From the IMG/VR virus record IMGVR_UViG_3300044957_000763, positions 62,001 to 126,000 of that record: DNA of 64,000 nucleotides; one strand, written 5' to 3'. Below, piece by piece: positions 14,035-39,618 of the stretch. The notes below the pieces were generated by a model that was not told the origin of the DNA, did not search any database, and saw only the letters and a list, made by a program, of their open reading frames with translations. A program made the translations under genes and the position numbers. Position 1 is the first letter of the stretch, and every line of letters starts with the position of its first letter.

Positions 14035-14958
14035 ATGTTAATTGATTTTCTAACACCAGAAGACATGTATCCAGAAATTATGGCGATGTCTATTGAAAAA
14101 GCCCAAAACTGGGGGCTTTTTATGTCGCATATTTCCGAAGCACAGAAACACACAAAAGGGGAGGGCATACTTGTGGCAGTATTGGATACTGGTGTTGCAT
14201 CCCATCCATGTTTAGATGGCGCAATTTTTGGTGATAAAGTCAACTTTACAGATTCACAAACTATTTTAGACCAGCAAGGTCATGGAACACACGTAGCCGG
14301 AATTATTGCCGCCAAAGAAATTAATGACAATGGTGTTATTGGAGTTGCACCAGAAGCACGAATCATGTCCGTAAAAGTCTTGAATGATTCTGCGCGTGGT
14401 AATTATGGTTGGATTGAACAAGGTATTCATCACGCAATTTCCAATGGTGCGGATATTATCAATCTGAGCCTGGGTTCACCACAGCCACCGCCTCCAAGTT
14501 TGTACGCGGCAATTCAAGAAGCTGCCAATAAAGGGATTATTGTGGTGGCGGCGGCCGGTAATGATGCGGCTGCAGTAAATTACCCCGCAAGATACGACGA
14601 AGTTATTGGGGTTGCTGCCGTAGACCAACAGGGGAATATGGCAAATTTTTCGTCACATGACACCGCAATTGATGTTAGTGCACCCGGTGTGGGTATTTAC
14701 TCCACCAGCTTAAACAATGGATATGCTGTATTAAATGGAACAAGTCAAGCGGCCCCGTTTGTGTCTGGTGTATGTGCTCTACTGCTTTCATACAGCCGTA
14801 ATACTGCCGGGGTTGAGCCAATTAAAGGGTATTTGAAGATGCTCGAGGCTCTTGATTCAGTATGCGACCCTAAGGGTCGCGCAGGGCACATCGGCAGGGA
14901 TGGAGATGTAGGCTTTGGTATCCCAGATTTTGCCAACGTAAATTGGAAACAACAATGA
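14035..14958 (+). CDS. Subtilisin-like S8 serine peptidase
   Basis: Catalytic triad motifs VAVLDTG, HGTHVAG and GTSQAAP, oxyanion AAGND; GAGG SD upstream; no signal peptide. Confidence 0.93.
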   Translation: MLIDFLTPEDMYPEIMAMSIEKAQNWGLFMSHISEAQKHTKGEGILVAVLDTGVASHPCLDGAIFGDKVNFTDSQTILDQQGHGTHVAGIIAAKEINDNGVIGVAPEARIMSVKVLNDSARGNYGWIEQGIHHAISNGADIINLSLGSPQPPPPSLYAAIQEAANKGIIVVAAAGNDAAAVNYPARYDEVIGVAAVDQQGNMANFSSHDTAIDVSAPGVGIYSTSLNNGYAVLNGTSQAAPFVSGVCALLLSYSRNTAGVEPIKGYLKMLEALDSVCDPKGRAGHIGRDGDVGFGIPDFANVNWKQQ

Positions 14959-15005
14959 ACTTTGGCACCTGCAGCATAATTCATGGTAACATGGTAGTCA
15001 AGTAA

Positions 15006-15569
15006 ATGAAGGTGTCTCAGCTACAAAAATGGACTAAATTAATTGCATACACTATCTCAGTATCTGTAATCTCGGCACTTGTTTGGCTAAATTTGTTTTC
15101 GCAGTTTTTACTGGTTACAGTAACTGGAAATTCTATGGAACCAACTTACAAAAATGGTTCTTGGCACTTGGCCAACAAAAAAAGCAGACAACTACAACGT
15201 GATGACGTAATTGTGTTCAAAATCAAAAACGAAACATACATCAAACGAATTGTTGCGTTACCCAACGATGAAATTCCAGTATGCTATGGAATAGATGAAG
15301 GTCAACTTTATGCTTCTATTGTTAAAATGGAGATTGTATGGATGGGATACCCACATGAATGGATACAAATTCCATTGGACTACATATGGGTAGAGGGGGA
15401 CGCTAAAAACAACATGAGTACCGGTTCTGGATATATTGGTCTAGTTCATGTAAAAGATATCATAGGAGTGATGAATTACACAGAACCCCCAGAGGTATTT
15501 TGGTATAAGTCGGTCGTAAACCAAAGACGTGTTAAAACTCCTGAAAGATTCAAAAAGAAACATGCTTAG
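15006..15569 (+). CDS. Signal peptidase I family (S26) peptidase
   Basis: N-terminal hydrophobic helix, then GNSMEPT (catalytic Ser), YIKRIVALP (catalytic Lys) and WVEGD box. Confidence 0.88.
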   Translation: MKVSQLQKWTKLIAYTISVSVISALVWLNLFSQFLLVTVTGNSMEPTYKNGSWHLANKKSRQLQRDDVIVFKIKNETYIKRIVALPNDEIPVCYGIDEGQLYASIVKMEIVWMGYPHEWIQIPLDYIWVEGDAKNNMSTGSGYIGLVHVKDIIGVMNYTEPPEVFWYKSVVNQRRVKTPERFKKKHA

Positions 15570-16227
15570 AACCAACAGATATGCACAATACAAGACTGAA
15601 GACCCAATGCGCAAAGTTATTCGTATTGGTCAAAGAGCATCATGTACTGTATCTGTTGTGACGCCTAAAGAATATGCAACTGGTAGCGGATTTCATGTTG
15701 GGCACGGTCTAATTGTTACAGCGGCTCATGTAGTAGGAGAGCAATCTCCTACTACATCAATTAATGTTACCTTTGATGGCATATCTATGTACCCGGCACA
15801 ATTTGTGTCTTCTAATCCAGAATTAGACATAGCTATTGTGCACTTACCAAAAATCAAAGAACACATCGGAAAGATAGAATTCGGAGACAGCAATGTGGTC
15901 GAACGCGGAGATATGATAGCAGTCATTGCGTCTCCAGAAGGATTTCACGACACAAGTACAGTTGGTAGGGTTACAAACATTCACCAGTCGCCAGAGATAA
16001 ATGAGGATTCTCCAGCGTGGAATGACTTAATTCTCATTGATATTGACCTCTTGCCTGGTTCGAGTGGCGGAATGGTGTTAAATCAAGATGGCAAGTTGAT
16101 TGGCATGGTTCTGGGTATACTAGACAGAACCGGACAAACACCGTTGTTAGTTGGATTGAATAGTGTTCAGCCAAGCAACAAACTAGTATCTATTGTGGCT
16201 GATGCCATACACTATATGTCGCGATAA
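15562..16227 (+). CDS. Trypsin-like (S1, HtrA-type catalytic domain) serine protease without PDZ
   Basis: GSGF, LIVTAAHVV, DIAIV and PGSSGG motifs; ATG 15562 chosen (15607 is an alternative). Confidence 0.88.
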   Translation: MLRTNRYAQYKTEDPMRKVIRIGQRASCTVSVVTPKEYATGSGFHVGHGLIVTAAHVVGEQSPTTSINVTFDGISMYPAQFVSSNPELDIAIVHLPKIKEHIGKIEFGDSNVVERGDMIAVIASPEGFHDTSTVGRVTNIHQSPEINEDSPAWNDLILIDIDLLPGSSGGMVLNQDGKLIGMVLGILDRTGQTPLLVGLNSVQPSNKLVSIVADAIHYMSR

Positions 16228-16242: not shown

Positions 16243-17307
16243 ATGAGTGGACAAACAAAATCTCCATATGAGACACTTGGGGTAAGCAATACGGCTTCGG
16301 CCAAGGAAATCCAGTCTGCATATCGTAAACTGGCGAGAGAATACCACCCAGACGTTAATCCAAGCCCCGATGCAGAAAATAAGTTCAAAGAAATTGCGAA
16401 CGCATATGCGCTATTAAGTGACCCGGAAAAAAGAAGAGATTTTGACAACGGCGTAATTGATGCCAAAGGAGAACCAGTATATTCTCATTCTGGCAGACAC
16501 GAATGGGGCGGCGGGAGTCCATTCGATTTTATGAACGGATTTGGATTTAACTTTCAGCCACAAGTTAGGAATTCAAATGTTGTAGTGCATTATGAGGTTA
16601 ATGCGTCAAAGTTGTTTTCAGAACATGACGCACATATTAAGTATCAAAAGGTGTCTTCGTGTCTGGAGTGTTCTGGAAGTGGCGGTACTGGCAATACAAC
16701 AATATGCAACGAATGTCAGGGTGTTGGACATAAGACACACGTCCGAAGGGCAGGCAACATGGTCATACAAGAGCGAGGTGTGTGTGATAAATGCAAGGGT
16801 AGAGGACAAACCTACGATTCTAATTGCAAATCATGTGATGGAATTGGACTCAAGACCTCAAATGAAGAAATATTTCTCAAAATACCTGCTAATTGCGCAT
16901 TCGGGAGTATGATTGTTTCAGAACAAGGTCATCAAGAAACATTATCGGCTCCGGCGGGTGATTTGGTAATTGTAATGGTGCCCATAAGCAAATATTGTAA
17001 ATTTGATGGATACACAGCTAACTATGAGTTACTTGTAGACCCTATAAGGGCGATGCTTGGATGCAAGGTAAAAGCCAATGGATTGAAGCCAGAAGAGGAA
17101 TTGATAATAGATATTCCTAAGATGACAGAACCGAACACTCGTATCGTATTAAAACACAAAGGTTTGTCCGATATGAATGGTAAACGACATGATGCAAATA
17201 TCGTAATTGTGTATAAGATGCCTGTCAACCTGACGGATGCGCAAGAAGCAGCGCTGAATGCATATTTGTCACCCAACGATAGTGCACCGGAGAAACAAAC
17301 AAAATGA
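16243..17307 (+). CDS. dnaJ: Class A DnaJ (Hsp40) co-chaperone
   Basis: J-domain with HPD, short G/F region, four CxxCxGxG zinc motifs (CLECSGSG, CNECQGVG, CDKCKGRG, CKSCDGIG), C-terminal GDL domain. Confidence 0.95.
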   Translation: MSGQTKSPYETLGVSNTASAKEIQSAYRKLAREYHPDVNPSPDAENKFKEIANAYALLSDPEKRRDFDNGVIDAKGEPVYSHSGRHEWGGGSPFDFMNGFGFNFQPQVRNSNVVVHYEVNASKLFSEHDAHIKYQKVSSCLECSGSGGTGNTTICNECQGVGHKTHVRRAGNMVIQERGVCDKCKGRGQTYDSNCKSCDGIGLKTSNEEIFLKIPANCAFGSMIVSEQGHQETLSAPAGDLVIVMVPISKYCKFDGYTANYELLVDPIRAMLGCKVKANGLKPEEELIIDIPKMTEPNTRIVLKHKGLSDMNGKRHDANIVIVYKMPVNLTDAQEAALNAYLSPNDSAPEKQTK

Positions 17308-17974: not shown

Positions 17975-20662
17975 ATGGTTCGTATAGTCATAGATAACGC
18001 AGTATCAAACATACTTGGAAATTTTCATACTGACTACGAAGTCTCTAATGAAATTAGAGAAGAACTTCGTAATGCCTTGGCGTATCAAGTTAGTGGTGCC
18101 GAATGGTCTGAAAAGTACAAAGATGGCACCTGGGACGGAAAGATTTCTCTATACAACAAAAGAGAGAAAAGTTTTCCAACCGGATTGTTATTTAGGGTCA
18201 AACAAGTACTACAAGACAGACATGTTGAGTTTGTGGTAGAGAACAAGCGCGAGAAACCAGAAACAAACAAACTTGTAACAACTGCGTTTCAAGAATACAA
18301 AAGAGCCCTGCGGCCTTATCAAGAGTTAGTTGTTGAAGCCGCTAAGGCTCGTGGTCGAGGTGTGTTATCAGTCGCCACTGGCGGCGGAAAAGCCCTGTGT
18401 GTCAATACCCCAATCCTAACCGCAAATCGAGGATGGGTCACCATGGGTGAAATCGAAACGGGAGATATTGTATTTGACGATAATGGAAATACGACTCGTG
18501 TCTTATGCGCTCATTCAGTTTTGTTTAACCAAACATGTTATGATATTGAGTTTTCTGACGGTAGCACAATCACTGCCGATGCTGAACATCTGTGGAGTGT
18601 AAAAGTCACCTCTGGATACAGTAACAAATCTCAAATGATTACACTAACAACTCAGCAAATGCTCAATGATATGCTCAATGAAGGCAGTAGCACTTGGAGA
18701 ACCAAAAAGCGAAAGGGAAGAACTGAAAAACGTTCAATGTTTTATATCGAGAGACCAAGTGTGATTTCATATCCTTCAATTGATGCAAAATTAGAGCTAG
18801 ACCCATATTTGCTCGGTTGCTGGCTTGGTGGTGGCGGTACCAAATCTGGCATATTCAGTACTTCCGAGGATTATTTTATAGATGTATTTGCTAAACATGG
18901 ATTCATTCTTAGGCATGTGAGCAAATATGACTATTACGTCAAGGGCATGCGACAAAAATTGCGCGCAATAGGTGTTTGGGACAATAAACATGTACCTGAG
19001 CAATATCTACGAGGCGATATCACAACAAGACAACATGTTTTAGCAGGAATTATAGACACAGACGGTCACATCGACTCTCGTGGTCGAATAGAAATCACAT
19101 TATGCAACGAAAGGCTTGCCAAAGATGTGGTTGAATTATGTAGAGGTCTTGGTGCCCAGGTGAATGCTAAGAAATCAGATGCAAAACTAAACAAAATAAT
19201 TGTTGGAAGTAGATGGAGGATAAAGATTTCACCAAATAACAATATCATGTGTTTGCTCCCTAGAAAATATGAAAAAATAAATTACAAACGAAGAAAAACT
19301 ATCGGTCGCGTGTATGTTAAATCAATCAACGAACGTAGTTCAACTCCGGTGAGATGTATTACTGTTGATTCCGCGAGTAGGCTATATCTTACAGGCGAAA
19401 CACTGATTCCAACACACAATACTATGATTTCTGCCGAACTGATAGCACAGCTTAAAGCATTGCCAGTCGTATTTATTGTGCCATCAAAGACCTTGATGCA
19501 CCAAACCAGAAAAGAGTTTCACAAATACCTTAGAGTCAACGGAGAAAAGACCAAAATAGGTATTGCCGGCGACAGTATTTGCGACCTAAACCCAGATGGA
19601 GTCAACATTCTTACGTGGCAAACAGCCCTGCAAGCATTTGACGAGAAATACACATCCAAAGGAGATAAGGTGGTGTATGATGAGTTCACTGGATTACAAG
19701 TACGCAAAACCAAAGCACAACTCATTGATGATGTGAATGATGCCACCAGAAAACTCAAACAAGCCGAAGAGAGCAAAGGTGATACCAAAGCAGCAAAGGC
19801 TGCACTTAAAAAAGCACAAACACGACTCAAAAATCGAGAACAACAACTCATCAACAAGAGCCAAATTAAGCAACTCATCAGAGACACTCCTGTTTTCATT
19901 GTAGACGAAGCACACACGGCTGCAATTGTCATTCAGCGACTTGGAGAACACGCGGGCAAATCGTATTACCGCTTTGGTGTCACTGCCACAGCATGGAGGG
20001 AGGACAATCAAGAGATACGCATTGAGGGCACATTTGGGCGCATTCTCATTAACATTCGCCCTAGTGACTTGATTAGAGACGGATGGTTGGTAAGACCGTA
20101 TATATTCATGGTCAAAATCAAGCATATCGAAACACACTCAGACTATAACGATGCGTATTTGAAACATGTTGTGAATTGTTGGGAGAGAAACTATCGAATT
20201 AAGCAATTTGCTGAAGGACTTTTTGCGGCCGGAAGAAAAGTTCTCATACTTGTAGAAAGACTTGAGCACGGAGAAATTCTAGAACAAATGGTTTACAATT
20301 CGGTTTTTGTGCCAGGCAAAGACGATGGTAGCGGAAATGAAACCATTACAGAAGATGTAGAAAACTACAGATTGGAAATGCTTGCACGATGTGGTCGTGG
20401 TGAGCACATTTTGATTGCTACACAATGGGCCAATGTCGGTGTTGATGAACCTGCTATTGATTCATTGATACTTGCGGGGTCTAATCGGTCTTCTGTTACC
20501 ACATTTCAACAGGTTGGAAGAATCCTAAGACCGGCAGAAGGTAAAGAAAACGCTATTGTTATTGATTTTTCAGACGAACAAGATGATTTACATGACCACT
20601 CTCTCAAAAGGAAGAGAGCCTACGCACTTGAACCTGAATTCAAAGTATACAGAGTTCAATAA
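17975..20662 (+). CDS. SF2 DNA helicase (UvsW-like), intein-containing
   Basis: N-terminal EKYKDGTWDGKISLY; LRPYQ Q-motif; Walker A VATGGGK|T split by an intein; IVDEAH; GVTATA; QQVGRILR. About 552 aa after splicing. Confidence 0.9.
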   Translation: MVRIVIDNAVSNILGNFHTDYEVSNEIREELRNALAYQVSGAEWSEKYKDGTWDGKISLYNKREKSFPTGLLFRVKQVLQDRHVEFVVENKREKPETNKLVTTAFQEYKRALRPYQELVVEAAKARGRGVLSVATGGGKALCVNTPILTANRGWVTMGEIETGDIVFDDNGNTTRVLCAHSVLFNQTCYDIEFSDGSTITADAEHLWSVKVTSGYSNKSQMITLTTQQMLNDMLNEGSSTWRTKKRKGRTEKRSMFYIERPSVISYPSIDAKLELDPYLLGCWLGGGGTKSGIFSTSEDYFIDVFAKHGFILRHVSKYDYYVKGMRQKLRAIGVWDNKHVPEQYLRGDITTRQHVLAGIIDTDGHIDSRGRIEITLCNERLAKDVVELCRGLGAQVNAKKSDAKLNKIIVGSRWRIKISPNNNIMCLLPRKYEKINYKRRKTIGRVYVKSINERSSTPVRCITVDSASRLYLTGETLIPTHNTMISAELIAQLKALPVVFIVPSKTLMHQTRKEFHKYLRVNGEKTKIGIAGDSICDLNPDGVNILTWQTALQAFDEKYTSKGDKVVYDEFTGLQVRKTKAQLIDDVNDATRKLKQAEESKGDTKAAKAALKKAQTRLKNREQQLINKSQIKQLIRDTPVFIVDEAHTAAIVIQRLGEHAGKSYYRFGVTATAWREDNQEIRIEGTFGRILINIRPSDLIRDGWLVRPYIFMVKIKHIETHSDYNDAYLKHVVNCWERNYRIKQFAEGLFAAGRKVLILVERLEHGEILEQMVYNSVFVPGKDDGSGNETITEDVENYRLEMLARCGRGEHILIATQWANVGVDEPAIDSLILAGSNRSSVTTFQQVGRILRPAEGKENAIVIDFSDEQDDLHDHSLKRKRAYALEPEFKVYRVQ
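18392..19420 (+). mobile_element. Class 3 intein (343 aa) with LAGLIDADG homing-endonuclease domain
   Basis: Starts Ala (ALCVNTPI), block B TADAEHLW, block F VRCITVD, block G IPTHN followed by Thr+1; HEN motifs LLGCWLGGG and LAGIIDTDG. Confidence 0.92.
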
Positions 20663-21090: not shown

Positions 21091-22815
21091 ATGAGTAAAA
21101 AAATCAAAGCTCTAGGAATCGACCTTGGCACCACTAACAGTGTTGCAGCATATTTAAGGGAAGATGGTTCCATAGAAATCATACCAAATGCCGAAGGTGA
21201 AAGACTGACACCTTCGGTCTTTGCGGTATGGGACAACGACGAAGTTATCGTTGGTAAGCTGGCACACGATGGTGAGTCCATGAATGCCCATAGTACCGTA
21301 AGGTCTATCAAGCGACATATGGGCACTAATTATCGCGTTGAAGTTCAAGGCAAGAAGTATAGCCCAGAGCAAATTAGCGCGGCTATTTTGTCCAAAATCA
21401 AAAATGACGCCGAAGCATATCTTGGATACAAGGTCGATAAAGCTGTTATTACTGTGCCAGCATATTTCAACAGTGATGAGCGCCAAAGTACAAAAACCGC
21501 TGGTGAAATCGCTGGATTTGAGGTACTTCGTGTTATCAATGAACCAACAGCGGCAGCATTGGCCTATGGGCTCGACAAAAAAGAAGGTCAGACAGTTGTG
21601 GTTTACGACCTAGGTGGAGGTACTTTTGATATTACAGTGCTGCAACTAAGCGGTGACGGCATGTTTAATGTCAAATCCACAAGTGGAGACACACATCTAG
21701 GTGGTGATGATTTTGACCAGGTCATTATGGATTACTGCAGAAATCAATGGCATGATTATGTGGCCAATAATGACTCAGAGACCGCTTTGCGAACTGCTGC
21801 TGAATCCGCCAAGAAGGTTCTGACATCTACACAACAAGCCAAAATAGCAATTCACGGACTGCCAGTGGTAACTCTAACAAGAGATGTCTTCAATCATTTA
21901 ATTGAACCAATTGTCATGAAAACCAAGTCTTGTTTAGAATTAGCACTTAGGGACGCAGGCTTAAATGCTTCTAAAATTGACGAGGTTGTCTTTGTGGGTG
22001 GTTCTACGCGCATACCCCTTGTTGCATCCATGGTCGAACAATGGACTGGCAAAAAGCCAAATAAGAGCGTGAATCCAGACGAGGCTGTTGCTGTTGGCGC
22101 AGCTAGACAAGCCGCTATACTATCTGGCCAGACTGCACCAGATATTCTTTTGGTTGACGTCATACCATTAACTTTGGGAATTGAGACCGCAAGTGGTGTT
22201 ATGGACAGGATGATAAATCGCAACACGACCATTCCAACAGAAGCCTCAAAAATGTTCACAACTACTGAAGACAACCAAAGTTCAGTAGCAATCAAAGTTT
22301 ATCAAGGTGAACGACTAAAGGCCGATGGCAATAAACTCCTGGGTCAATTCAAACTAGAGGGGATTCCAGAAAAACCCAGAGGTGTTCCTGAAATTGAAGT
22401 TAGTTTCCATGTTGATGCTAACGGAATCCTAAGCGTTAAGGCCAAAGAACTTGTAAGCCAAATCGCGCAAAAGGTTGTACTTACTGGAAGTTCAAGTTTG
22501 ACATCTGAAGAAGTTGAACAAATGATGAGTGACGCCGAGAGCTCTCGAGCAGATGACGAAAAATACTTTGTACTAGCTGCGGCCCAAGATAAGATTCGAG
22601 GAAGAATACATCAGATAGAGTCACTTAGACGTGATGCATGGAGTGTACTAAGTACAAGCACAAAAGAAGAAATTGATGATGCGTTTCAGTCGTTAACAGA
22701 TGCCCAAGAAGACAAAAACATTAAGTTGCTTGAGTCTCTTGATGAATCATGTCAAGAAATTATGGTCAAGGCCAATAAAGAATTGTCTGAATTTGCTTCG
22801 AAGTTGATTAGATGA
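21091..22815 (+). CDS. dnaK: Hsp70/DnaK chaperone
   Basis: [45 protein letters not shown], linker [21 protein letters not shown]. Confidence 0.96.
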
Positions 22816-26147: not shown

Positions 26148-28547
26148 TCATGTTGTGCTAACGGCTATAAGTTCATCGCCTTTATCTGGTGGCACCTTGA
26201 GCAATGGCTTGATTGATTCTCGAATCTCTGAAGGATTAAGCATTACGCTCGAGCCATCTTTCGTACTACAAACAAGTGCGGTGTTGTCAGCAATAGGTAT
26301 CGCTGCAATAACTAATCCTGTTCGGTCAAACTTAACGTTGTCAATCGTGTTCTTGCCTACGGCTTGACGACCCGAATAACACCTGAATTTAGATATTGGC
26401 AATTTTTGAACGTATCCTAATGATGCAACGAACATGATGTGGCCGTTGAAATCATTGTGGACAACCACTGACTGTGCTATTTTATCGTTGGTTGCGAGCT
26501 TGATGGCCCTAACACCGTTGGAGTTTCTACCCTGAATAGGGACAGAAGACAATGGATAGCAAACACCCTTGCCCATTTCTGTAGCGACAAGCAATTCGCC
26601 ATTATCAACACAAGGATGTGCGCTGATTAACCTTGAACCATCATTAATTTTCATGATATTGATTCCGGTTCGCTTCTTTGACTCAAACTCTGTTCCTTTG
26701 ATGCGCTTGACATGACCATCTTTTGTTGTAAGCACAAACATTTTCTTGACAGCAGATTCGAGTTCATATATGCCAATAACACTTTCGTCTGGACGACAAC
26801 CAATGAGTTGAGCGATGTGGGTGCCTTTGCCCTTTCCACTGTATGGTATATCATGACCTTGTTTGCAGTAGGCTGTTCCTGTGTCGGTCACAAACACAAT
26901 AGTGTTCAGTGTATTTGTCTCTACGTATTGAGAGCCTTGGTCAAACGAACCGTTTCTGCGAACATATCCATCAAGATTGATACTTACTACGATATCTTCC
27001 CGCTTAATTAGGTCTTGTGCCGAAACAGTTTCAGCATCGTCTCCGATTTGCGTTCGGCGGTCGTCACCATACTTCTCAACAAAATCATCTAATTGCTTAA
27101 GAACAGCATCCCGCATTGCGGATTTGGAAGACAGTAGTTTCTCGAGTTTTGAGGCACGTTTTTCAGCCTGGTCTTTTTGCTCAAGTAACTGATTGACTTC
27201 GAGTTTAGTTAGCTTCTTAAGGCTAATTTCAAGCACTGCTATTGCCTGCTCGTCGGTTTTGACGTATTTACACGCAATCAACCGCTCTTTTGCATCTGTA
27301 GGTGATTCAGAATCAAGAATCAAATCAACAACCTCTCGAATCTTTGAACATATGTTCACAAGACCTTCGAGAATATGGATGCGTTTGGTGAGTTTATCGA
27401 GTTCTGCTTCACTGCGCCTCTTGAGAATAGAAACTCGGTGATTGTAATAAGACATCGCCAGGTCAATGATTGAAACATTTTCACTGGCGCGCCCATTGAC
27501 AATGGCTGTTTGATTCACTGAGAATGTGTTGCGCAAACACGTATTTCGCAGAAGTGTCCTTATTACCAATTGCTCATCTGCTGTTTTAGACAGTGTGAAC
27601 ACAATCTTGATAACTTTGGCACCGTCTTTTCGGTGACTGAGTTCTTTAAGGTCTGTGACTCCATCGAGTTTTTTGTTTTGCACTAAATCCGCAACTTGTT
27701 GTGCTAATTTATCTGGTGAAGAGCCATACGGGAGTTCGTTGACGGTGATTGTCTTGTTGCCTTTGGAATCTGCACCAGTTTCCCATATTCCATCTATCGT
27801 GATGGTTCCTCGACCAGTGTTGTAATACTGACGTGTTGAACTTTGTCCGCGAATAACGCCACCAGTTGGGAAGTCAGGGCCTGGCATAAGTTCTAATAGT
27901 CGGTCAACAGTTACATCTTTGTTTGTGACACACTCTCGAATCACCGATGCGACTTCGCGTAAATTATGTGGTGCGAAATTACACGCGATACTTACTGCAA
28001 TACCAGAACCACCGTTACACAGAAGATTAGGAAACAGTCCCGGTAGAATAACTGGTTCGAAATCAGTTTCAGTATAGTTTGGCTGAAAATCTACCGCATC
28101 TGCGCTAACATCATCTACTACAGCGATTCCATATGGACTCAAACGAGCCTCTGTGTATCGCATCGCCGCTGCATCAAGACCGTCGACAGTGCCGAAATTT
28201 CCTTGACCGTGAATTAGCGGATACCTTAAAACCCAGTCTTGCACAAGACGAGTAAGAGTGGGGTAAATGACTGACTCACCATGTGGGTGCAAGTCGCCGC
28301 TAGTTTGTCCACAGACTTTGGCGCACTTGCAGTATTTACTACCGTCATCAAGTCCAAGCCTGTACATGGAATACAACAATCGACGTTGGGCCGGCTTGAG
28401 TCCGTCTTTAGAGTTCGGGATAGCACGTTGAAGAATTGCGTGTGTTGAGTATCGGACATATGAGTTGTCCAAAACTCTTGGCAATGACTGTTCTTCAATG
28501 TCACCGAAATACTCGATATTGACTGCGTCTTTTCTTTTTCTAGCCAA
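26148..28547 (-). CDS. gyrA: Type IIA topoisomerase subunit A (GyrA/ParC family)
   Basis: DGLKPAQRR, HPHGES, AAAMRYTEARL (catalytic Tyr), GPDFPTGG, six-bladed CTD; TTG start overlapping the gyrB stop. Confidence 0.95.
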   Translation of the reverse strand: MARKRKDAVNIEYFGDIEEQSLPRVLDNSYVRYSTHAILQRAIPNSKDGLKPAQRRLLYSMYRLGLDDGSKYCKCAKVCGQTSGDLHPHGESVIYPTLTRLVQDWVLRYPLIHGQGNFGTVDGLDAAAMRYTEARLSPYGIAVVDDVSADAVDFQPNYTETDFEPVILPGLFPNLLCNGGSGIAVSIACNFAPHNLREVASVIRECVTNKDVTVDRLLELMPGPDFPTGGVIRGQSSTRQYYNTGRGTITIDGIWETGADSKGNKTITVNELPYGSSPDKLAQQVADLVQNKKLDGVTDLKELSHRKDGAKVIKIVFTLSKTADEQLVIRTLLRNTCLRNTFSVNQTAIVNGRASENVSIIDLAMSYYNHRVSILKRRSEAELDKLTKRIHILEGLVNICSKIREVVDLILDSESPTDAKERLIACKYVKTDEQAIAVLEISLKKLTKLEVNQLLEQKDQAEKRASKLEKLLSSKSAMRDAVLKQLDDFVEKYGDDRRTQIGDDAETVSAQDLIKREDIVVSINLDGYVRRNGSFDQGSQYVETNTLNTIVFVTDTGTAYCKQGHDIPYSGKGKGTHIAQLIGCRPDESVIGIYELESAVKKMFVLTTKDGHVKRIKGTEFESKKRTGINIMKINDGSRLISAHPCVDNGELLVATEMGKGVCYPLSSVPIQGRNSNGVRAIKLATNDKIAQSVVVHNDFNGHIMFVASLGYVQKLPISKFRCYSGRQAVGKNTIDNVKFDRTGLVIAAIPIADNTALVCSTKDGSSVMLNPSEIRESIKPLLKVPPDKGDELIAVSTT

Positions 28548-30462
28548 CTTCTACACCCTCACCGCTTCTCTCAAGCAAGTATTCCTTTCTGGCAGACACT
28601 GACTTACCCATGAATGTTGATAATACTCGTTCGGCGTCAGCAGCATCTGGTACGCTAATGCGAATCAGTTTTCTGGTGGCATAGTCCATTGTGGTTTCTG
28701 CCAATTCGTGTGAGTTCATTTCTCCAAGACCTTTGAACCTTGTAATTCTTGGGCTCTTAAGTTTATCTACAATCTTCCTAAGCTCGTCATCATTCCAGCA
28801 ATAGTGTTTGACACCTTTGGAGTCCTCGACTTTGTAAAGTGGTGGAACGGCCAAATACAGATGACCATATGATACCAGAGGTTTCATGTATCGGTAGAAG
28901 AAAGCCAATAAAAGTGTTTCAATATGACCACCGTCAACATCGGCGTCAGTCATAATGATAATTCGTTCATATCTTCGGTCTTCAAGTCTAAAAGCCTCTT
29001 TGCCAGGTATTTCTACTCCAGAACCAATTGCAAGTACTAAACTCTTGACTTCTTCGTTTTTTAGTATACTTGCAAGGTCGTTTTTTTCTGCGTTCATGAT
29101 TTTACCACGCAATGGCAGAATTGCTTGAGTTTGTGGGTCTCGGCCATCAATAGCTGAACCAGCGGCCGAATCACCCTCTACGACAAACAACTCACTGTTG
29201 TGCCGGCTATCAACATTGCAGTCTTTGAGTTTGCCAGGAAGTCTAGTGCTTTTTGCAAAGGCACCTTTGCGCTTGATAAGGTCGGATTCTCGCTTTGCTG
29301 CTTCGCGGGCTTTTTGTGCTAACTGTGCTCGTTCAACGATTCTCTTGAGGAACTGAGGGTCTCTTTGAAAATAATCACTAAGTTGCTCTGATACAACAGA
29401 AAGAACCGAAGACTCGGCCTCTGAAGAACCTAACCTTCCCTTTGTTTGTCCTTCAAATTGTGGTTGTCGCAATCGGACAGTAAGAACCAGTACCAATCCA
29501 TCTCTGATATCATCGCTTTGTAAGCTATCTTTAATAAGGCCGCCTTTTTTGGCCGCAGTATTAACAGCAGATGTTAGCGCACGTTTGAACCCTGAGATAT
29601 GCGTACCACCTTCTGGTGTATGAATATTGTTGGCATATGAATGCAGGCTTTCATCGTCGTCCGAACGATACTGCATGCCAAATTTTACAGTTACTGCACC
29701 ACTTTTACCTTCAATAACAAGTGGTTGCTCTGGGTAAAGTCCTGTAGAATCACCGATAAAATCTGACAACATATCAATGATTCCACCGTCTGACAGGAAC
29801 GTATATTGTTTGTCATTTGGCTCATCATTAAATGTTACTTTCAAACCTGGATTAAGGTGTGCAATTTCTCGCAGTCTTCGAACTATAATGTTTGAATCAT
29901 AGTGCTTAACCGACTTAAAAATACCTTTGTCCGGTGTGAATGTGATTTTGGTTCCAGATTTTCCTGCACTGCCAATTTTCTCAACCTTAGTCGAAGGCTT
30001 ACCTTTTGAATAAGTTTGTTTATAGCTCCCAACTGCTCCTGCTGATTTGTCGACTCGATTTACCACAACCTCGAAATATTCAGATAGTGCGTTTACACAC
30101 GACACACCAACACCGTGCAAGCCACCAGATTCCTGATATGCTTCATCGTGACCAAATTTACCACCGGCATGTAACACGGTCATAACAACTTCAAGCGTAG
30201 ACCTACCGTCAGATGGGTGATTATCTACCGGAATCCCTCGACCATCGTCTTCAATAGACACAGTGAATCCGTCTTTGAATAAAACAACGTTGATGTTCGA
30301 GCAAAACCCTTGCATTGCTTCGTCTACGGAATTGTCTAGAACCTCACCTATTAAGTGATGCATTCCTCGCTCTCCGTCATCACCAACGTACATGCCAGGT
30401 CGCAACCTAACGGCATCCATCGGTTCTAAAACCGTGATTGATTGTGTACTGTACTTGGACAT
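28540..30462 (-). CDS. gyrB: Type IIA topoisomerase subunit B (GyrB/ParE family)
   Basis: RPGMYVG, DNSVDEA, DDGRGIP, GGLHGVGVSCVNALS, EGDSAAG, PLRGKI, IMTDADVDG, RFKGLGEMN. Confidence 0.96.
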   Translation of the reverse strand: MSKYSTQSITVLEPMDAVRLRPGMYVGDDGERGMHHLIGEVLDNSVDEAMQGFCSNINVVLFKDGFTVSIEDDGRGIPVDNHPSDGRSTLEVVMTVLHAGGKFGHDEAYQESGGLHGVGVSCVNALSEYFEVVVNRVDKSAGAVGSYKQTYSKGKPSTKVEKIGSAGKSGTKITFTPDKGIFKSVKHYDSNIIVRRLREIAHLNPGLKVTFNDEPNDKQYTFLSDGGIIDMLSDFIGDSTGLYPEQPLVIEGKSGAVTVKFGMQYRSDDDESLHSYANNIHTPEGGTHISGFKRALTSAVNTAAKKGGLIKDSLQSDDIRDGLVLVLTVRLRQPQFEGQTKGRLGSSEAESSVLSVVSEQLSDYFQRDPQFLKRIVERAQLAQKAREAAKRESDLIKRKGAFAKSTRLPGKLKDCNVDSRHNSELFVVEGDSAAGSAIDGRDPQTQAILPLRGKIMNAEKNDLASILKNEEVKSLVLAIGSGVEIPGKEAFRLEDRRYERIIIMTDADVDGGHIETLLLAFFYRYMKPLVSYGHLYLAVPPLYKVEDSKGVKHYCWNDDELRKIVDKLKSPRITRFKGLGEMNSHELAETTMDYATRKLIRISVPDAADAERVLSTFMGKSVSARKEYLLERSGEGVEVG

Positions 30463-31731: not shown

Positions 31732-34700
31732 TTACACTCGAAACGTTGCTTTTAATTGTAAGTTTCCAAGTTGATATGGTCCCTCTCCTGTTGGCGGTTT
31801 AACTGCGATAGCTAGTTTCTTTGACGAACCAATCAGTCTTGGGTTTACATAGGCAATTCCGAGGTCAATAGCATCATCTTGAGTTGTTGGTAGATTTGCC
31901 CAGGTATCTGGGTTTTGTAACAAAGTGCTGCCAAATGCATCAGCATATGTAGACGAAGCGTCATCTATACTCAAGCCGTCTGGATTGTTCCACTCTTCGT
32001 CTTCGAGTGTATCTGTTTTGAGTCTCCAAAGACTTGGTTCTCCTTCTGGAGAATATCGCGTGTATACTACATAATCTCCATCTGGTGTATATGTTGGTCT
32101 CGTGCACTCAGAAGTATTTTGTGTGAGTCGTGTCTCTGTGTTAGTAGCCAACTCATATGAATACAACTGATATTCACCAGTCCTATCATTCGCATAGACA
32201 ACTATCGTTCCAGTCGGGTTCAGGCATGGATACCTACAATTACCTTCAACACTAACAACCACTTCGTGACCAGTGGCATCAGGTGTCACTTTCCATATCT
32301 CATAATCACCTGCGCCTACTTTTCTTGAGTAGTACACATGCGTTCCACTTGGATTCCATACTGGTTCTATTGAATTAGATGTATTAGGGTCTGTTAAAAA
32401 CATTTTTCCTGTACCGTCATTGTCCATTATCGCCACCCCGTAATTCAAGAATGACGTGGCACCAAATGAAAACCCGTAAACAATATCAAGATAAATGATT
32501 GAATCATCATTTGTTTGATAAACAATTCTTGCATTGTTATCCACAGGTTCCCAAGATGGCTGAGAACTTTGAATTAGTAAGCCATAGTGATTTGTCAATA
32601 AACTCAGCACTGAACTGGAATTAAGTTTGTAAATATTGACTCCGCCATTGCCCTGGCTAACATACGCCAGCTCTGTTCCGTTTTTGCTCCATGATGGCTG
32701 ATATGCATTTGCGTATGAACTTTCCGCAATAGTATTGTTGTCAGCACCTGTGGCTGCTATTTTGTAAATTTCATACTGACCATCAATATTGGAATCAAAA
32801 ACGATTTTTGCATCTGATTCGCCGTAATATGCGCTGCCGCATTCACCACTGTTCCACAGCAAATATGGTGCAAAAACTGTTCCAAGAGGTGTGTTTCGTG
32901 TATATATGTTTCGATAATTGTCTTCGCCTGCTACTAAAACGATTTTATTACCGTCGCTTCTCCAATCTGCTTGATAAACATTCAAGCCATTAGCATCAAC
33001 TTTGGTCTCTGTACCACCACCGATGGGCACATAATACAATTCCCATTTACCAGAACGATTACTAGTGAACATGACCTGAGTGTTGTCTGGAGAAATAGCC
33101 GGATAATCATTGTCACCAGTGGTGGACAATTGTGTCTGATTTGTGCCATCGTCATTCATTATCCAAATTTGTGGACTGCCTGTTCTAGTACTAACAAATG
33201 CAATTTTAGTACCGTCTTGGCTCCAGGCCGGGTGATAATCTTCTCCAGTATTAGTTGTTAATCGTGTAACAGCTCCGCCTGATGTAGCGCGTTTGTAAAT
33301 GTCAAGATTAGAATTTGTTCCACGGTCACTGGCAAACACCATGTATGAACCTGCGGTGTTCATATATGGGTGTTTGTCATTGTATGAGTTCGACATTACT
33401 TGAGACTCAGTACCAGCTAAATTCACTGAGTAAATCTGATGATTACCATTTCGGTCTGAACCAAAAACAATGTCATTTGTGTTTCTGTTGTATCGAGGGT
33501 CTGTGTCCTGAGAATATGTTTCTGTAAGTTCAATCTCGTCAGTACCATCAATATTTCTCCATACAAGTATGTTGCTTGCGGTGAGTTCTTTGGTGTACAT
33601 AACCCTACCGGCTACTGGGTCTACCCTAGGCCATTTTCCTGGAAAACTAACAGCAGAAACATCTCCGGTCTCCTTTGCCTCAACTCTGTAAATCTCACCG
33701 TTGCCATTTTGAGAGATGGCTTCAAATACGATTTCCTCGTCATTTGGAGTAAAAGAGGGACTACGATTTCCAAGTGGTGTAATCGCAGTGACTACCTGCA
33801 CCATGTTGGTGCCATCTGAGTCACACATCCAAACTTCGCCAGAGCGAATAAATGTGATTTTAGTCGCATCATTAGACCACCTTGCCTGGCCGTCCTCGGC
33901 TGTTGTTGATAGACTCGTATTTCCAGTACCATCTGGATTGATAAACCCAAAACCGGCCTGAGCATTGTTTGTCAAGGTTGTGTACAGAATTTTGTCATTG
34001 GTGCCCCAGTCAGGAAAAGCTGATGATGCACGCAATAAAGTTCTATCCCATGGAACTAACGTGCTGGCTGTGTAAATCCCATACGATGAATTAAACACGT
34101 CTAAAAAGCGCGACTGAATGACTATCTCTGATGAATCGGGACTTAAAGAGGCAAATCTATCATTGTATCCGAGACTTGTAATTCTAACTGCGTCATCATG
34201 CCCTGTAATTGAATACAATCCACTAACGTAATAGTTACTATCTTGACCAGAAAAATAGGTTATATCGTCATCTACGTTGTGCCCTGCTACTGGAGATGTA
34301 AGATATGTGTTTATTGTAATATTGCCTCCAGGACCAGTACCATCTGTTACGAAAATACCACCGTTATCTCCTAGAACTTTGCGACAGTACACTACCTTAA
34401 TTCCATCAGAACACCATCGTGCACCAATTTCTTCAGTTGTTGGTTCATTATCTGTGTTTGCTGATATAAAGCGAGCCATTGACGAACCGTTGACCTTGAT
34501 AGTGTGCAATCTATGAACTCCAGGATACGCCTCGTCTGTATACAACAATTCTGGCGAAGTGCTGCGCCAACTAATGTAGCTTTTATCAGTATCAGTGTCT
34601 GTCAGTTTGGTTAGCTTTTGTGTACTAATTGTGTAAAGAAATATCTGCGGTTTAAGAGGATGGTTTCCAGTTCCTCCTGGCATAATAATCGCAATGCGTT

Positions 34701-38616: not shown

Positions 38617-39618
38617 TCATTCACCCACCTGCTCTTTATTGATACGTTGTAAAAAGTCAGAAGCATGCGGGTCGTATTTTACCTGTGGTGTTTTTCGACG
38701 TAAAATTGCTCTCAGTCTTTCAGCTTCTACTTCTTTCATAGTTTTGGTGTCTAGCCAGTTTAGTGCGCCGGCTTGACGGTCTTTCTCCTGTTGTCGTTGT
38801 TGTAACGAGCCATCTCTCAAATCACGCAATGCGTTTTTTACTCCATCTCCAGATACAAAATCTTGAGCGGTATGTAGTGTAGTAGTCTCAAGCAAATCAT
38901 AGTCAACATACATCGCTTTTTGTAACCTGCCTTGCATTACAATGGTTCTGTCTCCAACTTGATACACTTCTTCTTCTGACTTAAAGAAATATGGACATGC
39001 TCGAGGAAAACAAATGTAAATCTTAAATGGAAGAGCATGTCCAATATCACTGCCTGCTGTGAGTCTTCTTACATCATCTTCATCTGGAACCAATGACACT
39101 GCTATTTTAACACCCATATCAGGTACTGCAAAATCCCACTCGTAGTTATGTTGTGGTAGTTCTGGATAGAACGCGGGTGCAATTCCAAGTTCATTTTTTC
39201 GTTCTGAAAGTGCAACAAAAAGACCATACCCTACAGAGTCAGCCGTTGTACCAGGTCTATAGTATCCGAGGTCGTCCCAGTCAATTTCGTATCTCTTACC
39301 ATCAATCTCAATAGAACGAGACTTGTCGGCGCCGCCCGAATCATAGTAACGACGTGCAATTGGGTCGGAAAGGATTGTGTGAGAACGAATTGCTAACTTA
39401 AACAACTCTTCTGCGTTTTCTAGACCTGGGTTATAATCAGGATGATATTTTCGACAGGCGTTTTGGTATGCTCTGTCAAGGATATCAGCTAATACTCTTC
39501 TGTCAGCGGGTGTAGTGCCACTTGGCACGCTTTCGCGAACAAGCCCAAGGACATCGTAATAATCTACAGAGAAGTCTACTAGTTTTTTCGCGTCCATTCT
39601 TTTTGTTGTTGACGACAT
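38617..39618 (-). CDS. J-domain protein with unknown C-terminal region (class C)
   Basis: DYYDVLG...AYQNACRKYHPDYNPG...FKLAIRSHTILSDPIARRYYD. Confidence 0.85.
   Translation of the reverse strand: MSSTTKRMDAKKLVDFSVDYYDVLGLVRESVPSGTTPADRRVLADILDRAYQNACRKYHPDYNPGLENAEELFKLAIRSHTILSDPIARRYYDSGGADKSRSIEIDGKRYEIDWDDLGYYRPGTTADSVGYGLFVALSERKNELGIAPAFYPELPQHNYEWDFAVPDMGVKIAVSLVPDEDDVRRLTAGSDIGHALPFKIYICFPRACPYFFKSEEEVYQVGDRTIVMQGRLQKAMYVDYDLLETTTLHTAQDFVSGDGVKNALRDLRDGSLQQRQQEKDRQAGALNWLDTKTMKEVEAERLRAILRRKTPQVKYDPHASDFLQRINKEQVGE

What the first reader, a model, noticed from the sequence alone, without database searches (positions are those of the whole stretch)
21091..22815. Phage Hsp70 has lost the DnaK nucleotide-cleft latch and may be GrpE-independent
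Seen by manual alignment to E. coli DnaK: K55/R56 (PAKRQ) correspond to LAHDG; E264 (RLKEAAE) is T in ALRTAAE; the subdomain IIB hairpin NLPYITADATGPKH is shortened to AIHGLPVV. Known: the K55-E267 and R56-E264 salt bridges and this loop slow ADP release and define GrpE dependence, and HscA-type Hsp70s lack them. No grpE is in the window. Inference: a fast-cycling Hsp70 decoupled from the host nucleotide-exchange factor.
Basis: partly seen in the sequence, partly recalled or inferred. Interest (0 to 1): 0.68.

Follow-up and report, generated by a model that had tools for sequence, protein, structure and literature searches.

The report
Phage Hsp70 without GrpE latch
A 479-kb lake-water phage encodes its own Hsp70 chaperone with two dedicated J-protein partners, and this Hsp70 belongs to a phage-restricted subfamily whose nucleotide cleft has been remodelled so that it probably recycles without the exchange factor GrpE, the one chaperone component the phage does not carry.

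Summary
ORF 21091-22815 (+) is an intact 574-aa Hsp70.

- E. coli K55/R56 are H59/D60.
- E264 is T235; E267 is kept as E238.
- V59/L257 are S/D.
- The IIB hairpin that carries the GrpE signature is 9 residues shorter.

In 79 diverse cellular DnaKs these latch positions are K/R, R/N, E/D and E without exception.

This is not private decay. The protein belongs to a monophyletic clade (support 95-96) found on huge-phage contigs. The clade carries a conserved A-phi-D-x-E motif: no K/R at position 55, D/E56 in 120 of 125 members and E58 in all. It also has an altered or deleted GrpE signature and has lost the invariant D148.

Catalytic, linker and most J-domain-contact residues are kept, though D477 and E217 are replaced. 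dN/dS is 0.04.

The complete genome also encodes DnaJ, a second clade-specific J-protein, GroES/GroEL, a ClpB-like protein and Hsp20. It encodes no GrpE, by the Pfam model or by a custom profile. Eleven clade-bearing phage records have 0 GrpE. Four of 12 huge phages with a classical DnaK do encode GrpE.

GrpE-independent fast exchange is the best-supported reading, but it is inferred and not measured. Absence of a phage grpE is not diagnostic by itself.

The parts
21091..22815 (+). Hsp70 gene, 574 aa (NBD, linker ILLVDV 352-357, SBD-beta, helical lid, no acidic C-terminal tail)
   Evidence: Pfam HSP70 3e-182. NCBIfam DnaK PRK00290 scores 647.9 against a cut-off of 648, and TIGR02350 scores 625.8 against 822.6. 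AF2 model has pLDDT 88.2, and its best PDB matches are full-length DnaK structures. dN/dS is 0.037 against a 94%-identical relative.
21262..21279 (+). IB helix motif A58-H59-D60-G61-E62-S63, replacing DnaK A54-K55-R56-Q57-A58-V59: the basic half of both cleft salt bridges and the V59 hydrophobic contact are gone
   Evidence: Alignments. Clade-wide pattern is A-phi-D-x-E, with E at position 58 in 120/120. R56D and A58E are two of only seven sites that separate the clade from cellular DnaK.
21784..21807 (+). IIB helix A232-L233-R234-T235-A236-A237-E238-S239 (DnaK R261-K268): E264 is T235, E267 is kept as E238, R261 is A232
21838..21885 (+). Shortened IIB beta-hairpin [16 protein letters not shown] (residues 250-265): 9 residues shorter than DnaK 278-303, and the GrpE signature 290-295 and Y285 are deleted
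   Evidence: The AF2 model keeps two short strands, 249-252 and 260-263. The same kind of deletion is seen in HscA (PMC8215388).
16243..17307 (+). Phage DnaJ-like class A J-protein, 354 aa (J domain with HPD at 35-37, CxxCxGxG zinc centre, DnaJ_C)
   Evidence: Pfam DnaJ 6e-25, DnaJ_CXXCXGXG and DnaJ_C. NCBIfam DnaJ_bact scores 231.5, below its cut-off of 377. A DnaJ-like gene lies 1-5 kb from hsp70 in all clade phages examined. Complex prediction of Hsp70 + ATP + J domain gave weak support: 0.60 against 0.00 for the best control.
38617..39618 (-). Second J-protein (JDP2), 333 aa: J domain with an insertion, HPD at 59-61, and a C-terminal domain of about 230 aa with no known family
   Evidence: Pfam DnaJ 2e-10 only. 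Full-length homologues (33-38% identity, E 1e-67 to 1e-87) occur in five other clade phages at a similar distance from hsp70. No atlas or PHROG function was found.
14035..16227 (+). Three protease genes directly upstream of dnaJ: S8 subtilase-like (14035-14958), S26/S24 peptidase-like (15006-15569), trypsin-like (15529-16227)
   Evidence: Pfam Trypsin_2 3e-23 for 15529-16227. The S8 and S26/S24 assignments come from the precomputed Pfam hits on the syntenic genes of the 94% relative. ORFs listed.

Best explanation
The gene encodes a functional Hsp70 of a phage-restricted subfamily. It works with two phage-encoded J-domain proteins as a self-contained chaperone machine, and probably needs no nucleotide-exchange factor.

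Shown:
- The ATPase catalytic residues, the interdomain linker, the substrate pocket and most J-domain contact residues are conserved (D477 and E217 are not), and the gene is under strong purifying selection.
- Both cleft salt bridges of DnaK cannot form as in DnaK. The basic residues K55/R56 are H/D and E264 is T.
- The hydrophobic V59-L257 contact is polar, and the IIB hairpin with the GrpE signature is cut by 9 residues.
- The conserved DnaK residues that touch the GrpE beta-domain (56, 60, 264, 285) are all changed or deleted.

Inferred: with acidic D60/E62 on lobe I facing the retained E238 on lobe II, the cleft is less firmly closed. ADP would then leave quickly on its own, as in HscA and HscC. 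The cycle would be paced by the phage J-proteins and be insensitive to host GrpE, and probably to other host factors that dock on IIB.

Likely role (inferred from context): folding and assembly of phage proteins, including several giant ones. It would act alongside the phage's own GroES/GroEL, ClpB-like protein, Hsp20 and proteases.
For: Alignment of latch and hairpin.

Conservation in 79 cellular DnaKs compared with 120 clade members.

Site comparison over 605 positions:
- Only seven clade-defining sites, led by R56D and A58E.
- K55, Q260 and D148 are among the sites that are invariant in cells but replaced in the clade.
- D8, K70, E171, D194, T199, D201, R167, Q378, L391, D393, P419 and V436 are kept.

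Clade monophyly: FastTree 95 and IQ-TREE SH-aLRT 96. Hairpin shortening needs 3 changes within the clade, which is convergent with HscA/HscC.

GrpE:
- None in the complete genome by the Pfam model at E<=1.
- None with a custom profile built from E. coli, Armatimonadota and four phage GrpEs, run as hmmsearch --max over 3,830 ORFs; best E 0.9.
- The rest of the network is present: two J-proteins, GroES+GroEL, ClpB-like and Hsp20.
- 0 of 11 clade-bearing phage records have GrpE, including ones rated 100%, 100% and 89% complete. All have a DnaJ-like gene near hsp70 and most have JDP2.
- GrpE is found in 4 of 12 huge phages with a classical KR/E/E DnaK.

GrpE contact residues come from the M. tuberculosis complex paper PMC10803776. 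The literature basis for latch, signature and HscA/HscC behaviour is PMC8215388 and PMC4753570.

dN/dS 0.037. Full Hsp70 fold, pLDDT 88.
Against: - No kinetic or binding measurement exists.
- E267 is retained, and H59 could form a weak bridge with it. Eukaryotic Hsp70s with only the lower bridge still use exchange factors in vivo (PMC4753570).
- M. tuberculosis DnaK has N56, so no upper bridge, and is GrpE-dependent.
- Most clade members keep a full-length hairpin with P293 and H295. The deletion is therefore not required for the clade's function.
- The G32 loop (NAEGER), another GrpE contact, is conserved, although it is conserved in all Hsp70s including HscA/HscC.
- Eight of 12 huge phages with a classical DnaK also lack grpE. 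The co-occurrence contrast (0/11 against 4/12) is suggestive and not significant.
- The near-invariance of D56 and the strict invariance of E58 (never D) point to a specific contact that this explanation does not identify.
Confidence: 0.6

Rival explanations
1. The Hsp70 still depends on the host's GrpE. The latch changes only tune the basal off-rate, and host GrpE binds through the remaining conserved surfaces: the G32 loop, IA/IIA, the linker and the SBD.
For: - A candidate host lineage has its own GrpE and a classical DnaK: the Armatimonadota MAG G017 carries a syntenic phage-like block.
- Many phages with a classical DnaK carry no grpE and must borrow the host's.
- M. tuberculosis DnaK with N56 is GrpE-dependent.
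- G32, R34, Y130 and the E20 equivalents are conserved.
Against: - All four conserved region-I contacts are changed or deleted: 56, 60, 264 and 285.
- The GrpE signature is deleted.
- Position 56, which H-bonds GrpE in the M. tuberculosis complex, is acidic throughout the clade.
- HscA and HscC, with the same kinds of change, do not use GrpE (PMC8215388, PMC4753570).
- The phage carries every other component of the network but not GrpE.
Confidence: 0.17
2. The acidic pair D56/E58 is a new docking or latch site, and the latch has not simply been lost. One possibility is a charge-reversed latch to basic residues of the IIB helix (R234 here, R261/R263 elsewhere). Another is a binding site for an unidentified phage-encoded regulator or exchange factor, for example the C-terminal domain of JDP2 or one of the unannotated neighbours.
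For: - E58 is invariant (120/120, never D) and D/E56 occupies 120 of 125 clade members, while overall identity falls to about 48%. That is more than relaxed selection would give.
- JDP2, with an unknown conserved C-terminal domain, co-occurs with the clade.
- R234 sits next to T235.
Against: - No basic residue on the IIB helix is conserved across the clade. Position 263 is R69/W40/M8/L3, 261 is absent or A in 36 of 120, and 268 is mostly Q.
- No candidate factor was identified.
- The tools give no model coordinates, so the geometry could not be checked.
Confidence: 0.15
3. The protein is not primarily a folding chaperone. It may be a host-takeover or counter-defence device, for example titrating host J-proteins, sigma-32-type regulators or chaperone-dependent defence systems, with the cleft changes incidental.
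For: - Phage chaperone genes have been proposed as counter-defence tools, and a phage J-protein is known to manipulate host DnaK and sigma-32 (PMC12619734; PMC3486835).
- D148 and D477 at the allosteric/J interface are altered.
Against: - The substrate pocket, lid, linker and catalytic residues are intact.
- The gene comes with a class A DnaJ carrying zinc-finger and client-binding domains, and with GroESL, ClpB-like and Hsp20 genes. This is the signature of a folding network.
- The genome encodes several giant proteins that would plausibly need one.
Confidence: 0.08

Closest known systems
DnaK (bacterial Hsp70, the form without the subdomain IB insert; e.g. Geobacillus kaustophilus DnaK, PDB 2V7Y)
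   Same: Best sequence match: 52% identity over residues 6-491, E 2e-153. Same domain order. Catalytic, linker, pocket and most J-contact residues are conserved. It is paired with a class A DnaJ.
   Different: - K55/R56/E264 latch replaced and V59/L257 polar.
- GrpE signature hairpin deleted.
- D148 (34/34 in cellular DnaK) is S.
- Arch residues are small (A/T).
- No acidic C-terminal tail: 574 aa against about 610-640.
- Below both NCBIfam DnaK equivalog cut-offs.
- Branches outside all cellular DnaKs sampled.
HscA (Fe-S cluster Hsp70)
   Same: Lacks both cleft salt bridges and the GrpE signature hairpin. HscA is known to release ADP about 700-fold faster than DnaK and to work without GrpE (PMC8215388). 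The functional analogy is close.
   Different: - No N-terminal extension.
- Pocket V436 is kept, not M.
- Arch position 429 is T, not F.
- Partner is a DnaJ-type protein, not an HscB-type J-protein.
- 42% identity.
- NCBIfam HscA scores are below their cut-offs.
- Not grouped with HscA in the trees.
HscC (specialised Hsp70 with DjlC)
   Same: Similar length (556 against 574 aa). Lacks the IB insert, the latch and the GrpE signature. Has a hydrophobic residue at 55 (PAVS, against PAVD in most of the clade). Comes with dedicated J-proteins.
   Different: - Only 32% identity.
- No 4-8 residue insertion in SBD loop L1,2.
- The clade's D56/E58 motif is absent from E. coli HscC.
DnaK/DnaJ genes of other huge phages (Lak phages, LR7565xx megaphages, moraphages)
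   Same: Phage-borne Hsp70 with a J-protein on genomes of 350-735 kb (PMC12619734).
   Different: Those examined have a classical KR/E/E latch, a full hairpin and the IB insert. They nest among cellular DnaKs, and 4 of 6 complete ones also carry GrpE. The moraphage DnaKs are reported as recent acquisitions from Flavobacteriales.

Membership tests
Hsp70 superfamily (Pfam PF00012) | Full-length match to the HSP70 model, covering the actin-like NBD, linker, SBD-beta and lid | tested here: met
   E 3e-182, residues 8-562 on profile 2-594 of 599. AF2 model TM 0.92 to a full-length DnaK model.
Hsp70 superfamily (Pfam PF00012) | ATPase catalytic and phosphate-binding residues (D8, K70, E171, D194, T199, D201) and the hydrophobic linker with D393 | tested here: met
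   All are identical in P0001 and conserved in 44-45 of 45 clade representatives.
DnaK (NCBIfam equivalogs PRK00290 / TIGR02350) | Score at or above the curated equivalog cut-off | tested here: not met
   647.9 against 648, and 625.8 against 822.55.
DnaK (GrpE-dependent type, as defined by Brehmer et al. 2001 in PMC8215388) | Cleft salt bridges K55-E267 and R56-E264 | tested here: not met
   H59, D60, T235 and E238: only the acidic partner of the lower bridge remains.
DnaK (GrpE-dependent type, as defined by Brehmer et al. 2001 in PMC8215388) | Exposed IIB loop with the GrpE signature (residues 290-295) | tested here: not met
   9-residue deletion; 24 residues against 33 between the positions equivalent to E. 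coli 271 and 303.
DnaK (GrpE-dependent type, as defined by Brehmer et al. 2001 in PMC8215388) | Slow intrinsic ADP release that GrpE stimulates | not testable with these tools
   Needs stopped-flow kinetics with purified proteins.
HscA | N-terminal extension of about 17 residues; F at arch position 429; M at pocket position 436; HscB partner in an isc operon | tested here: not met
   No extension; T at 429; V at 436. The neighbours are DnaJ, a helicase and RNase HII. HscA models score below their cut-offs. HscB was not searched for.
HscC | Insertion of 4-8 residues in SBD loop L1,2, small NBD deletions, length 550-580 aa | tested here: not met
   The length fits (574 aa), but there is no L1,2 insertion and identity is only 32%.
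Phage 'A-phi-D-x-E' Hsp70 clade (defined here) | One branch separate from cellular DnaK; no K/R at 55; D/E at 56; E at 58; no IB insert; encoded on large phage contigs next to a DnaJ-like gene | tested here: met
   Support 95 and 96. Motif counts. Synteny. Only 1 of 201 Armatimonadota genomes holds such a gene, inside a phage-like block.

The most novel reading that the evidence does not exclude
A phage-restricted Hsp70 subfamily forms an orthogonal chaperone machine with its own class A DnaJ and a clade-specific J-protein of unknown C-terminal fold. This machine runs without any exchange factor and is insulated from host GrpE and ClpB control. The near-invariant acidic pair D56/E58 is a new functional element of the Hsp70 cleft. 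It may act as an electrostatic spring against E267 that keeps the cleft open, or as the docking site of a still unknown phage cofactor.
Probability: 0.35. Interest if true: 0.7.

Novelty: new variant of a known kind. Interest (0 to 1): 0.55.

Why it matters
Hsp70 cycling in bacteria is thought to rest on one exchange factor, GrpE. The only known exceptions are the specialised HscA and HscC.

A third, large and apparently virus-borne lineage would show that losing exchange-factor dependence is a recurrent evolutionary route for specialised Hsp70s. This lineage has reshaped the same cleft elements, shortened the same hairpin at least twice independently, and travels with its own J-proteins.

It would also offer a naturally minimal two-component Hsp70 system. 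It gives a concrete, testable site (D56/E58) for studying how cleft electrostatics set the ADP off-rate.

For phage biology, it shows that some huge phages bring a near-complete proteostasis network: Hsp70, two J-proteins, GroES/GroEL, a ClpB-like protein, a small Hsp and proteases. This network appears built to run independently of the host's regulators.

Tried and rejected
- **Megablast against phage records:** no match for the gene.
- **Single-protein scans of IMG/VR:** P0001 and P0045 found nothing. Close relatives seem to be withheld or absent, so the co-occurrence test rests on 11 clade records.
- **Genome-collection scan:** It served as a cellular reference panel, not as proof that the clade is absent from cells.
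- **HscA or HscC membership:** rejected.
- **Recent capture from a host DnaK:** rejected. The candidate host lineage's own DnaK is classical, and the clade branches outside all sampled DnaKs.
- **Decaying or pseudogenised gene:** rejected. The frame is intact, dN/dS is 0.037 and the fold is confident.
- **Complex prediction (Hsp70 + ATP + J domain of the phage DnaJ):** weak support only. Score 0.60, best of 3 controls 0.00. The mark is reached by 51 of 78 solved complexes and 2 of 108 mismatches, but a pass at 0.60 or below is weak. Runs agree in at least 93% of contacts and partner pLDDT is at least 83. A like complex is solved, so the pass may be from memory.
- **Residue-level structural superposition:** not possible, because the tools return no coordinates.
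- **Atlas search for the JDP2 C-terminal domain:** no usable hit.
- **RNA evidence:** no RNA runs hold the locus.
- **dN/dS for dnaJ:** my calculation gave a meaningless value because the pair was not properly aligned. I discard it.
- **Large representative protein search:** not used, as the word search and family scans sufficed.
Full report
**What is there.** The window is bases 62,001-126,000 of a 478,840-bp virus record with direct terminal repeats, rated 100% complete. It is found in lake-water metagenomes. ORF 21091-22815 (+) encodes a 574-aa protein. It matches Pfam HSP70 end to end (E 3e-182). Its best solved relatives are Geobacillus and M. tuberculosis DnaK, at about 50% identity. An AlphaFold2 model built on 47 relatives is confident (pLDDT 88.2, pTM 0.78) and has the complete NBD, linker, SBD-beta and lid architecture. 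Full-length DnaK structures are its best PDB matches. The gene is under strong purifying selection: dN/dS 0.037 against a 94%-identical relative. It is the only Hsp70 in the genome.

**Check of the observation.** Three alignments agree: HMMER pairwise, MAFFT with E. coli DnaK, HscA and HscC taken from NC_000913, and MAFFT of 290 Hsp70s.
- E. coli A54-K55-R56-Q57-A58-V59 corresponds to phage A58-H59-D60-G61-E62-S63.
- E. coli K263-E264-A265-A266-E267 corresponds to R234-T235-A236-A237-E238.
- The stretch equal to E. coli 271-303 is 24 instead of 33 residues. This removes Y285 and the GrpE signature 290-295.

The positions are not free to vary in cells. Among 79 DnaKs from many bacterial and some archaeal phyla, position 55 is K or R in all, 56 is R (73) or N (6), 264 is E or D in all, and 267 is E in all.

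The review PMC8215388 states that the K55-E267 and R56-E264 bridges slow nucleotide release. It also states that the GrpE signature 290-295 is deleted in HscA, that HscA releases ADP about 700-fold faster, and that HscC likewise lacks these elements. PMC4753570 states that HscA and HscC do not depend on GrpE.

**It is a clade trait, not a private loss.** The word-based protein search returned about 120 relatives of 48-94% identity and 563-619 aa, many on contigs of 100-446 kb. Nearly all carry A-phi-D-x-E in place of A-K-R-Q-A.
- No K or R at position 55 (V, C, A, I, H).
- D or E at position 56 in 120 members, with five outliers carrying N, A or S.
- E at position 58 in 120 of 120.
- E267 kept in 119.

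With cellular DnaKs, phage-borne classical DnaKs, HscA and HscC, these proteins form one branch. Support is 95 in FastTree and 96 SH-aLRT in IQ-TREE.

I compared 45 clade representatives with 34 cellular ones over 605 positions. Only seven sites are conserved in both groups but differ between them, and R56D and A58E head that list. Sites that are near-invariant in cells but replaced in the clade include K55, Q260 on the IIB helix and D148, which is 34/34 in cells and is linked to substrate-triggered ATP hydrolysis (PMC8215388).

The GrpE signature is altered throughout the clade. G292 is deleted in 102 of 120 members and K294 is hydrophobic. The whole hairpin tip is deleted in this protein's subclade and in others, and the short state needs three changes on the tree. 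The same shortening is seen in HscA and HscC, so it is a convergent change.

**Partners and the missing GrpE.**
- A class A DnaJ-like protein at 16243-17307 (+), with HPD, a zinc centre and a C-terminal domain.
- A second J-protein (JDP2) at 38617-39618 (-), with HPD and a 230-residue C-terminal part that has no family match.

JDP2 has full-length homologues in five other clade phages, at 33-38% identity.

GrpE is not found in the complete genome with the Pfam model at E<=1. It is also not found with a profile I built from E. coli, Armatimonadota and four phage GrpEs and ran without filters over all 3,830 open frames; the best E was 0.9.

Outside the window the genome does encode other chaperones.
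- GroES and GroEL; GroEL passes its equivalog cut-off.
- An 839-aa ClpB-like protein.
- An Hsp20.
- A further AAA+ protein.

Three protease genes sit just upstream of dnaJ. GrpE is thus the one standard component missing from an otherwise complete kit.

**Comparative test.**

| Group | Records | With GrpE | Other features |
|---|---|---|---|
| Clade-type Hsp70 (own genome plus ten IMG/VR records; three rated 100%, 100% and 89% complete) | 11 | 0 | All have a DnaJ-like gene 1-5 kb from hsp70; most have JDP2 |
| Huge phages with classical KR/E/E DnaK | 12 | 4 (LR756502, LR745206, LR756504, Lak-A1) | Eight lack GrpE |

Phage GrpE therefore travels only with classical DnaKs in this sample. The contrast is not statistically strong, and absence of a phage grpE is not diagnostic by itself.

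**GrpE contact surface.** In the M. tuberculosis DnaK-GrpE structure, the beta-domain of GrpE contacts DnaK R44, N56 and T60 on IB, and E236 and Y257 on IIB (PMC10803776). By the alignment, E236 and Y257 are E. coli E264 and Y285. Of the four contacts that are conserved in cellular DnaK (56, 60, 264, 285), the phage protein has D, M, T and a deletion. Contacts through G32, Y130 and the E20 equivalent are kept, but G32 is conserved in all Hsp70s, including HscA and HscC.

**Most likely mechanism.** The machine is an ordinary Hsp70 in its ATPase, allosteric linker, substrate pocket and most of its J-domain interface. D8, K70, E171, D194, T199, D201, R167, Q378, L391, D393, P419, F426 and V436 are all kept, whereas the J-contact residues D477 and E217 are replaced by H and N. 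A complex prediction with ATP and the J domain of the phage DnaJ gave only weak support. The score was 0.60 against 0.00 for the best of three controls, the runs agreed in at least 93% of contacts, and partner pLDDT was at least 83. A like complex has been solved, so the pass may be from memory.

What differs is the top of the nucleotide cleft. The basic side of both bridges is gone and replaced by an acidic pair that faces a retained glutamate. The hydrophobic contact is polar, and the hairpin that GrpE grips is cut away. By analogy with HscA, HscC and the DnaK latch mutants summarised in PMC8215388, this should give fast spontaneous ADP release and no response to GrpE. The cycle would then be governed by the phage's own J-proteins. 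This step is inference.

A role in folding and assembly of phage proteins is suggested by two things. One is the accompanying chaperones and proteases. The other is a set of giant open frames nearby, of 2,711, 1,808 and 1,487 aa.

**Rivals.**
- *Host GrpE is still used.* A candidate host lineage has GrpE and a classical DnaK, and M. tuberculosis DnaK with N56 needs GrpE. But the region-I contacts and the signature are gone.
- *The acidic pair is a new latch or docking site.* The strict invariance of E58 argues for a specific contact. But no basic IIB residue is conserved across the clade, and I could not inspect coordinates.
- *A takeover or counter-defence role.* This has been proposed for phage chaperones in PMC12619734. 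It fits poorly with the complete folding kit.

**Comparison and novelty.** The protein is closest in sequence to the DnaKs that lack the IB insert. It fails both NCBIfam DnaK equivalog cut-offs and the two sequence features that define the GrpE-dependent type. It is functionally most like HscA and HscC but fails their defining features. Phage DnaK and DnaJ genes have been reported (PMC12619734; the megaphage records). Those I examined are classical and nest among cellular DnaKs. I found no paper describing a phage-specific Hsp70 lineage with a remodelled cleft, but the library is incomplete. I rate it a new variant of a known kind, of moderate interest. The biochemical prediction is clear and cheap to test.

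**Limits.** Clade contigs other than the eleven IMG/VR records could not be scanned whole. The trees are quick or FastTree searches with long HscA and HscC branches, so the root is unknown. No residue-level structural superposition was possible. No expression data were found.

Noticed in passing
window 17975-20662 (+): The UvsW-like helicase (895 aa) is interrupted by an intein with a homing-endonuclease domain (Pfam UvsW_N, Hom_end, ResIII). The syntenic helicase on the Armatimonadota contig is 476 aa and has no intein.
   Followed up: partly
L181 (GCA_018268375.1, contig JAFDWS010000002.1, 1.36 Mb) = G017:C5:35-57 kb: A MAG labelled Armatimonadetes carries the same gene block on a 1.36-Mb contig. 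The order is giant protein, S8, S26, trypsin-like, DnaJ, helicase, Hsp70 (66% identity), RNase HII, GyrA, GyrB, Tricorn-like giant protein. The same contig also holds housekeeping genes and a cellular GrpE 673 kb away. This could be a prophage, a chimeric assembly or a host hint. Only 1 of 201 genomes of that phylum has such an Hsp70.
   Followed up: partly
G000:C1:135800-138300 (L208), 182295-184814 (L207), 218995-219264, 280733-282772 (L209); all outside the window: The phage also encodes GroES and GroEL (GroEL passes its equivalog cut-off), an 839-aa ClpB-like AAA+ protein, an Hsp20 and a 679-aa AAA+/FtsH-like protein. The ClpB-like match skips profile positions 449-532, so part of the middle domain appears to be missing. 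From my own knowledge, that is the region that binds DnaK subdomain IIB in ClpB.
   Followed up: partly
window 38617-39618 (-): The second J-protein has a conserved C-terminal domain of about 230 residues with no Pfam, PHROG or atlas match. Its motifs include VDW..G.YR.GT, PAF.P....NY.WDF and LPFKIY.C.P. It lies at the head of a minus-strand run with a PIN-PhoH fusion (37204-38595) and a 1,808-aa Tricorn-like protein (31732-37158).
   Followed up: partly
window 21091-22815, residues equivalent to E. coli D148, D477, E206, M404/A429, D540/H544: Other functional sites also diverge beyond the cleft. D148 (34/34 in cellular DnaK) is S/N/H in the clade. D477, which contacts the J domain, is H here. 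The substrate arch is A/T, both small. The lid latch D540 is R. Together these suggest altered allosteric coupling and client kinetics.
   Followed up: partly
window 5872-14007 (+), 31732-37158 (-), 56944-61407 (+): There are very large open frames of 2,711, 1,808 and 1,487 aa. The second resembles Tricorn/PD40 beta-propeller proteins in the syntenic relatives. They are possible clients of the phage chaperones.
   Followed up: no
window 26148-30462 (-): Phage-encoded DNA gyrase A and B subunits (799 and 640 aa) lie downstream of the Hsp70-RNase HII pair, as in the relatives. They were identified from the precomputed Pfam hits on the syntenic loci.
   Followed up: no
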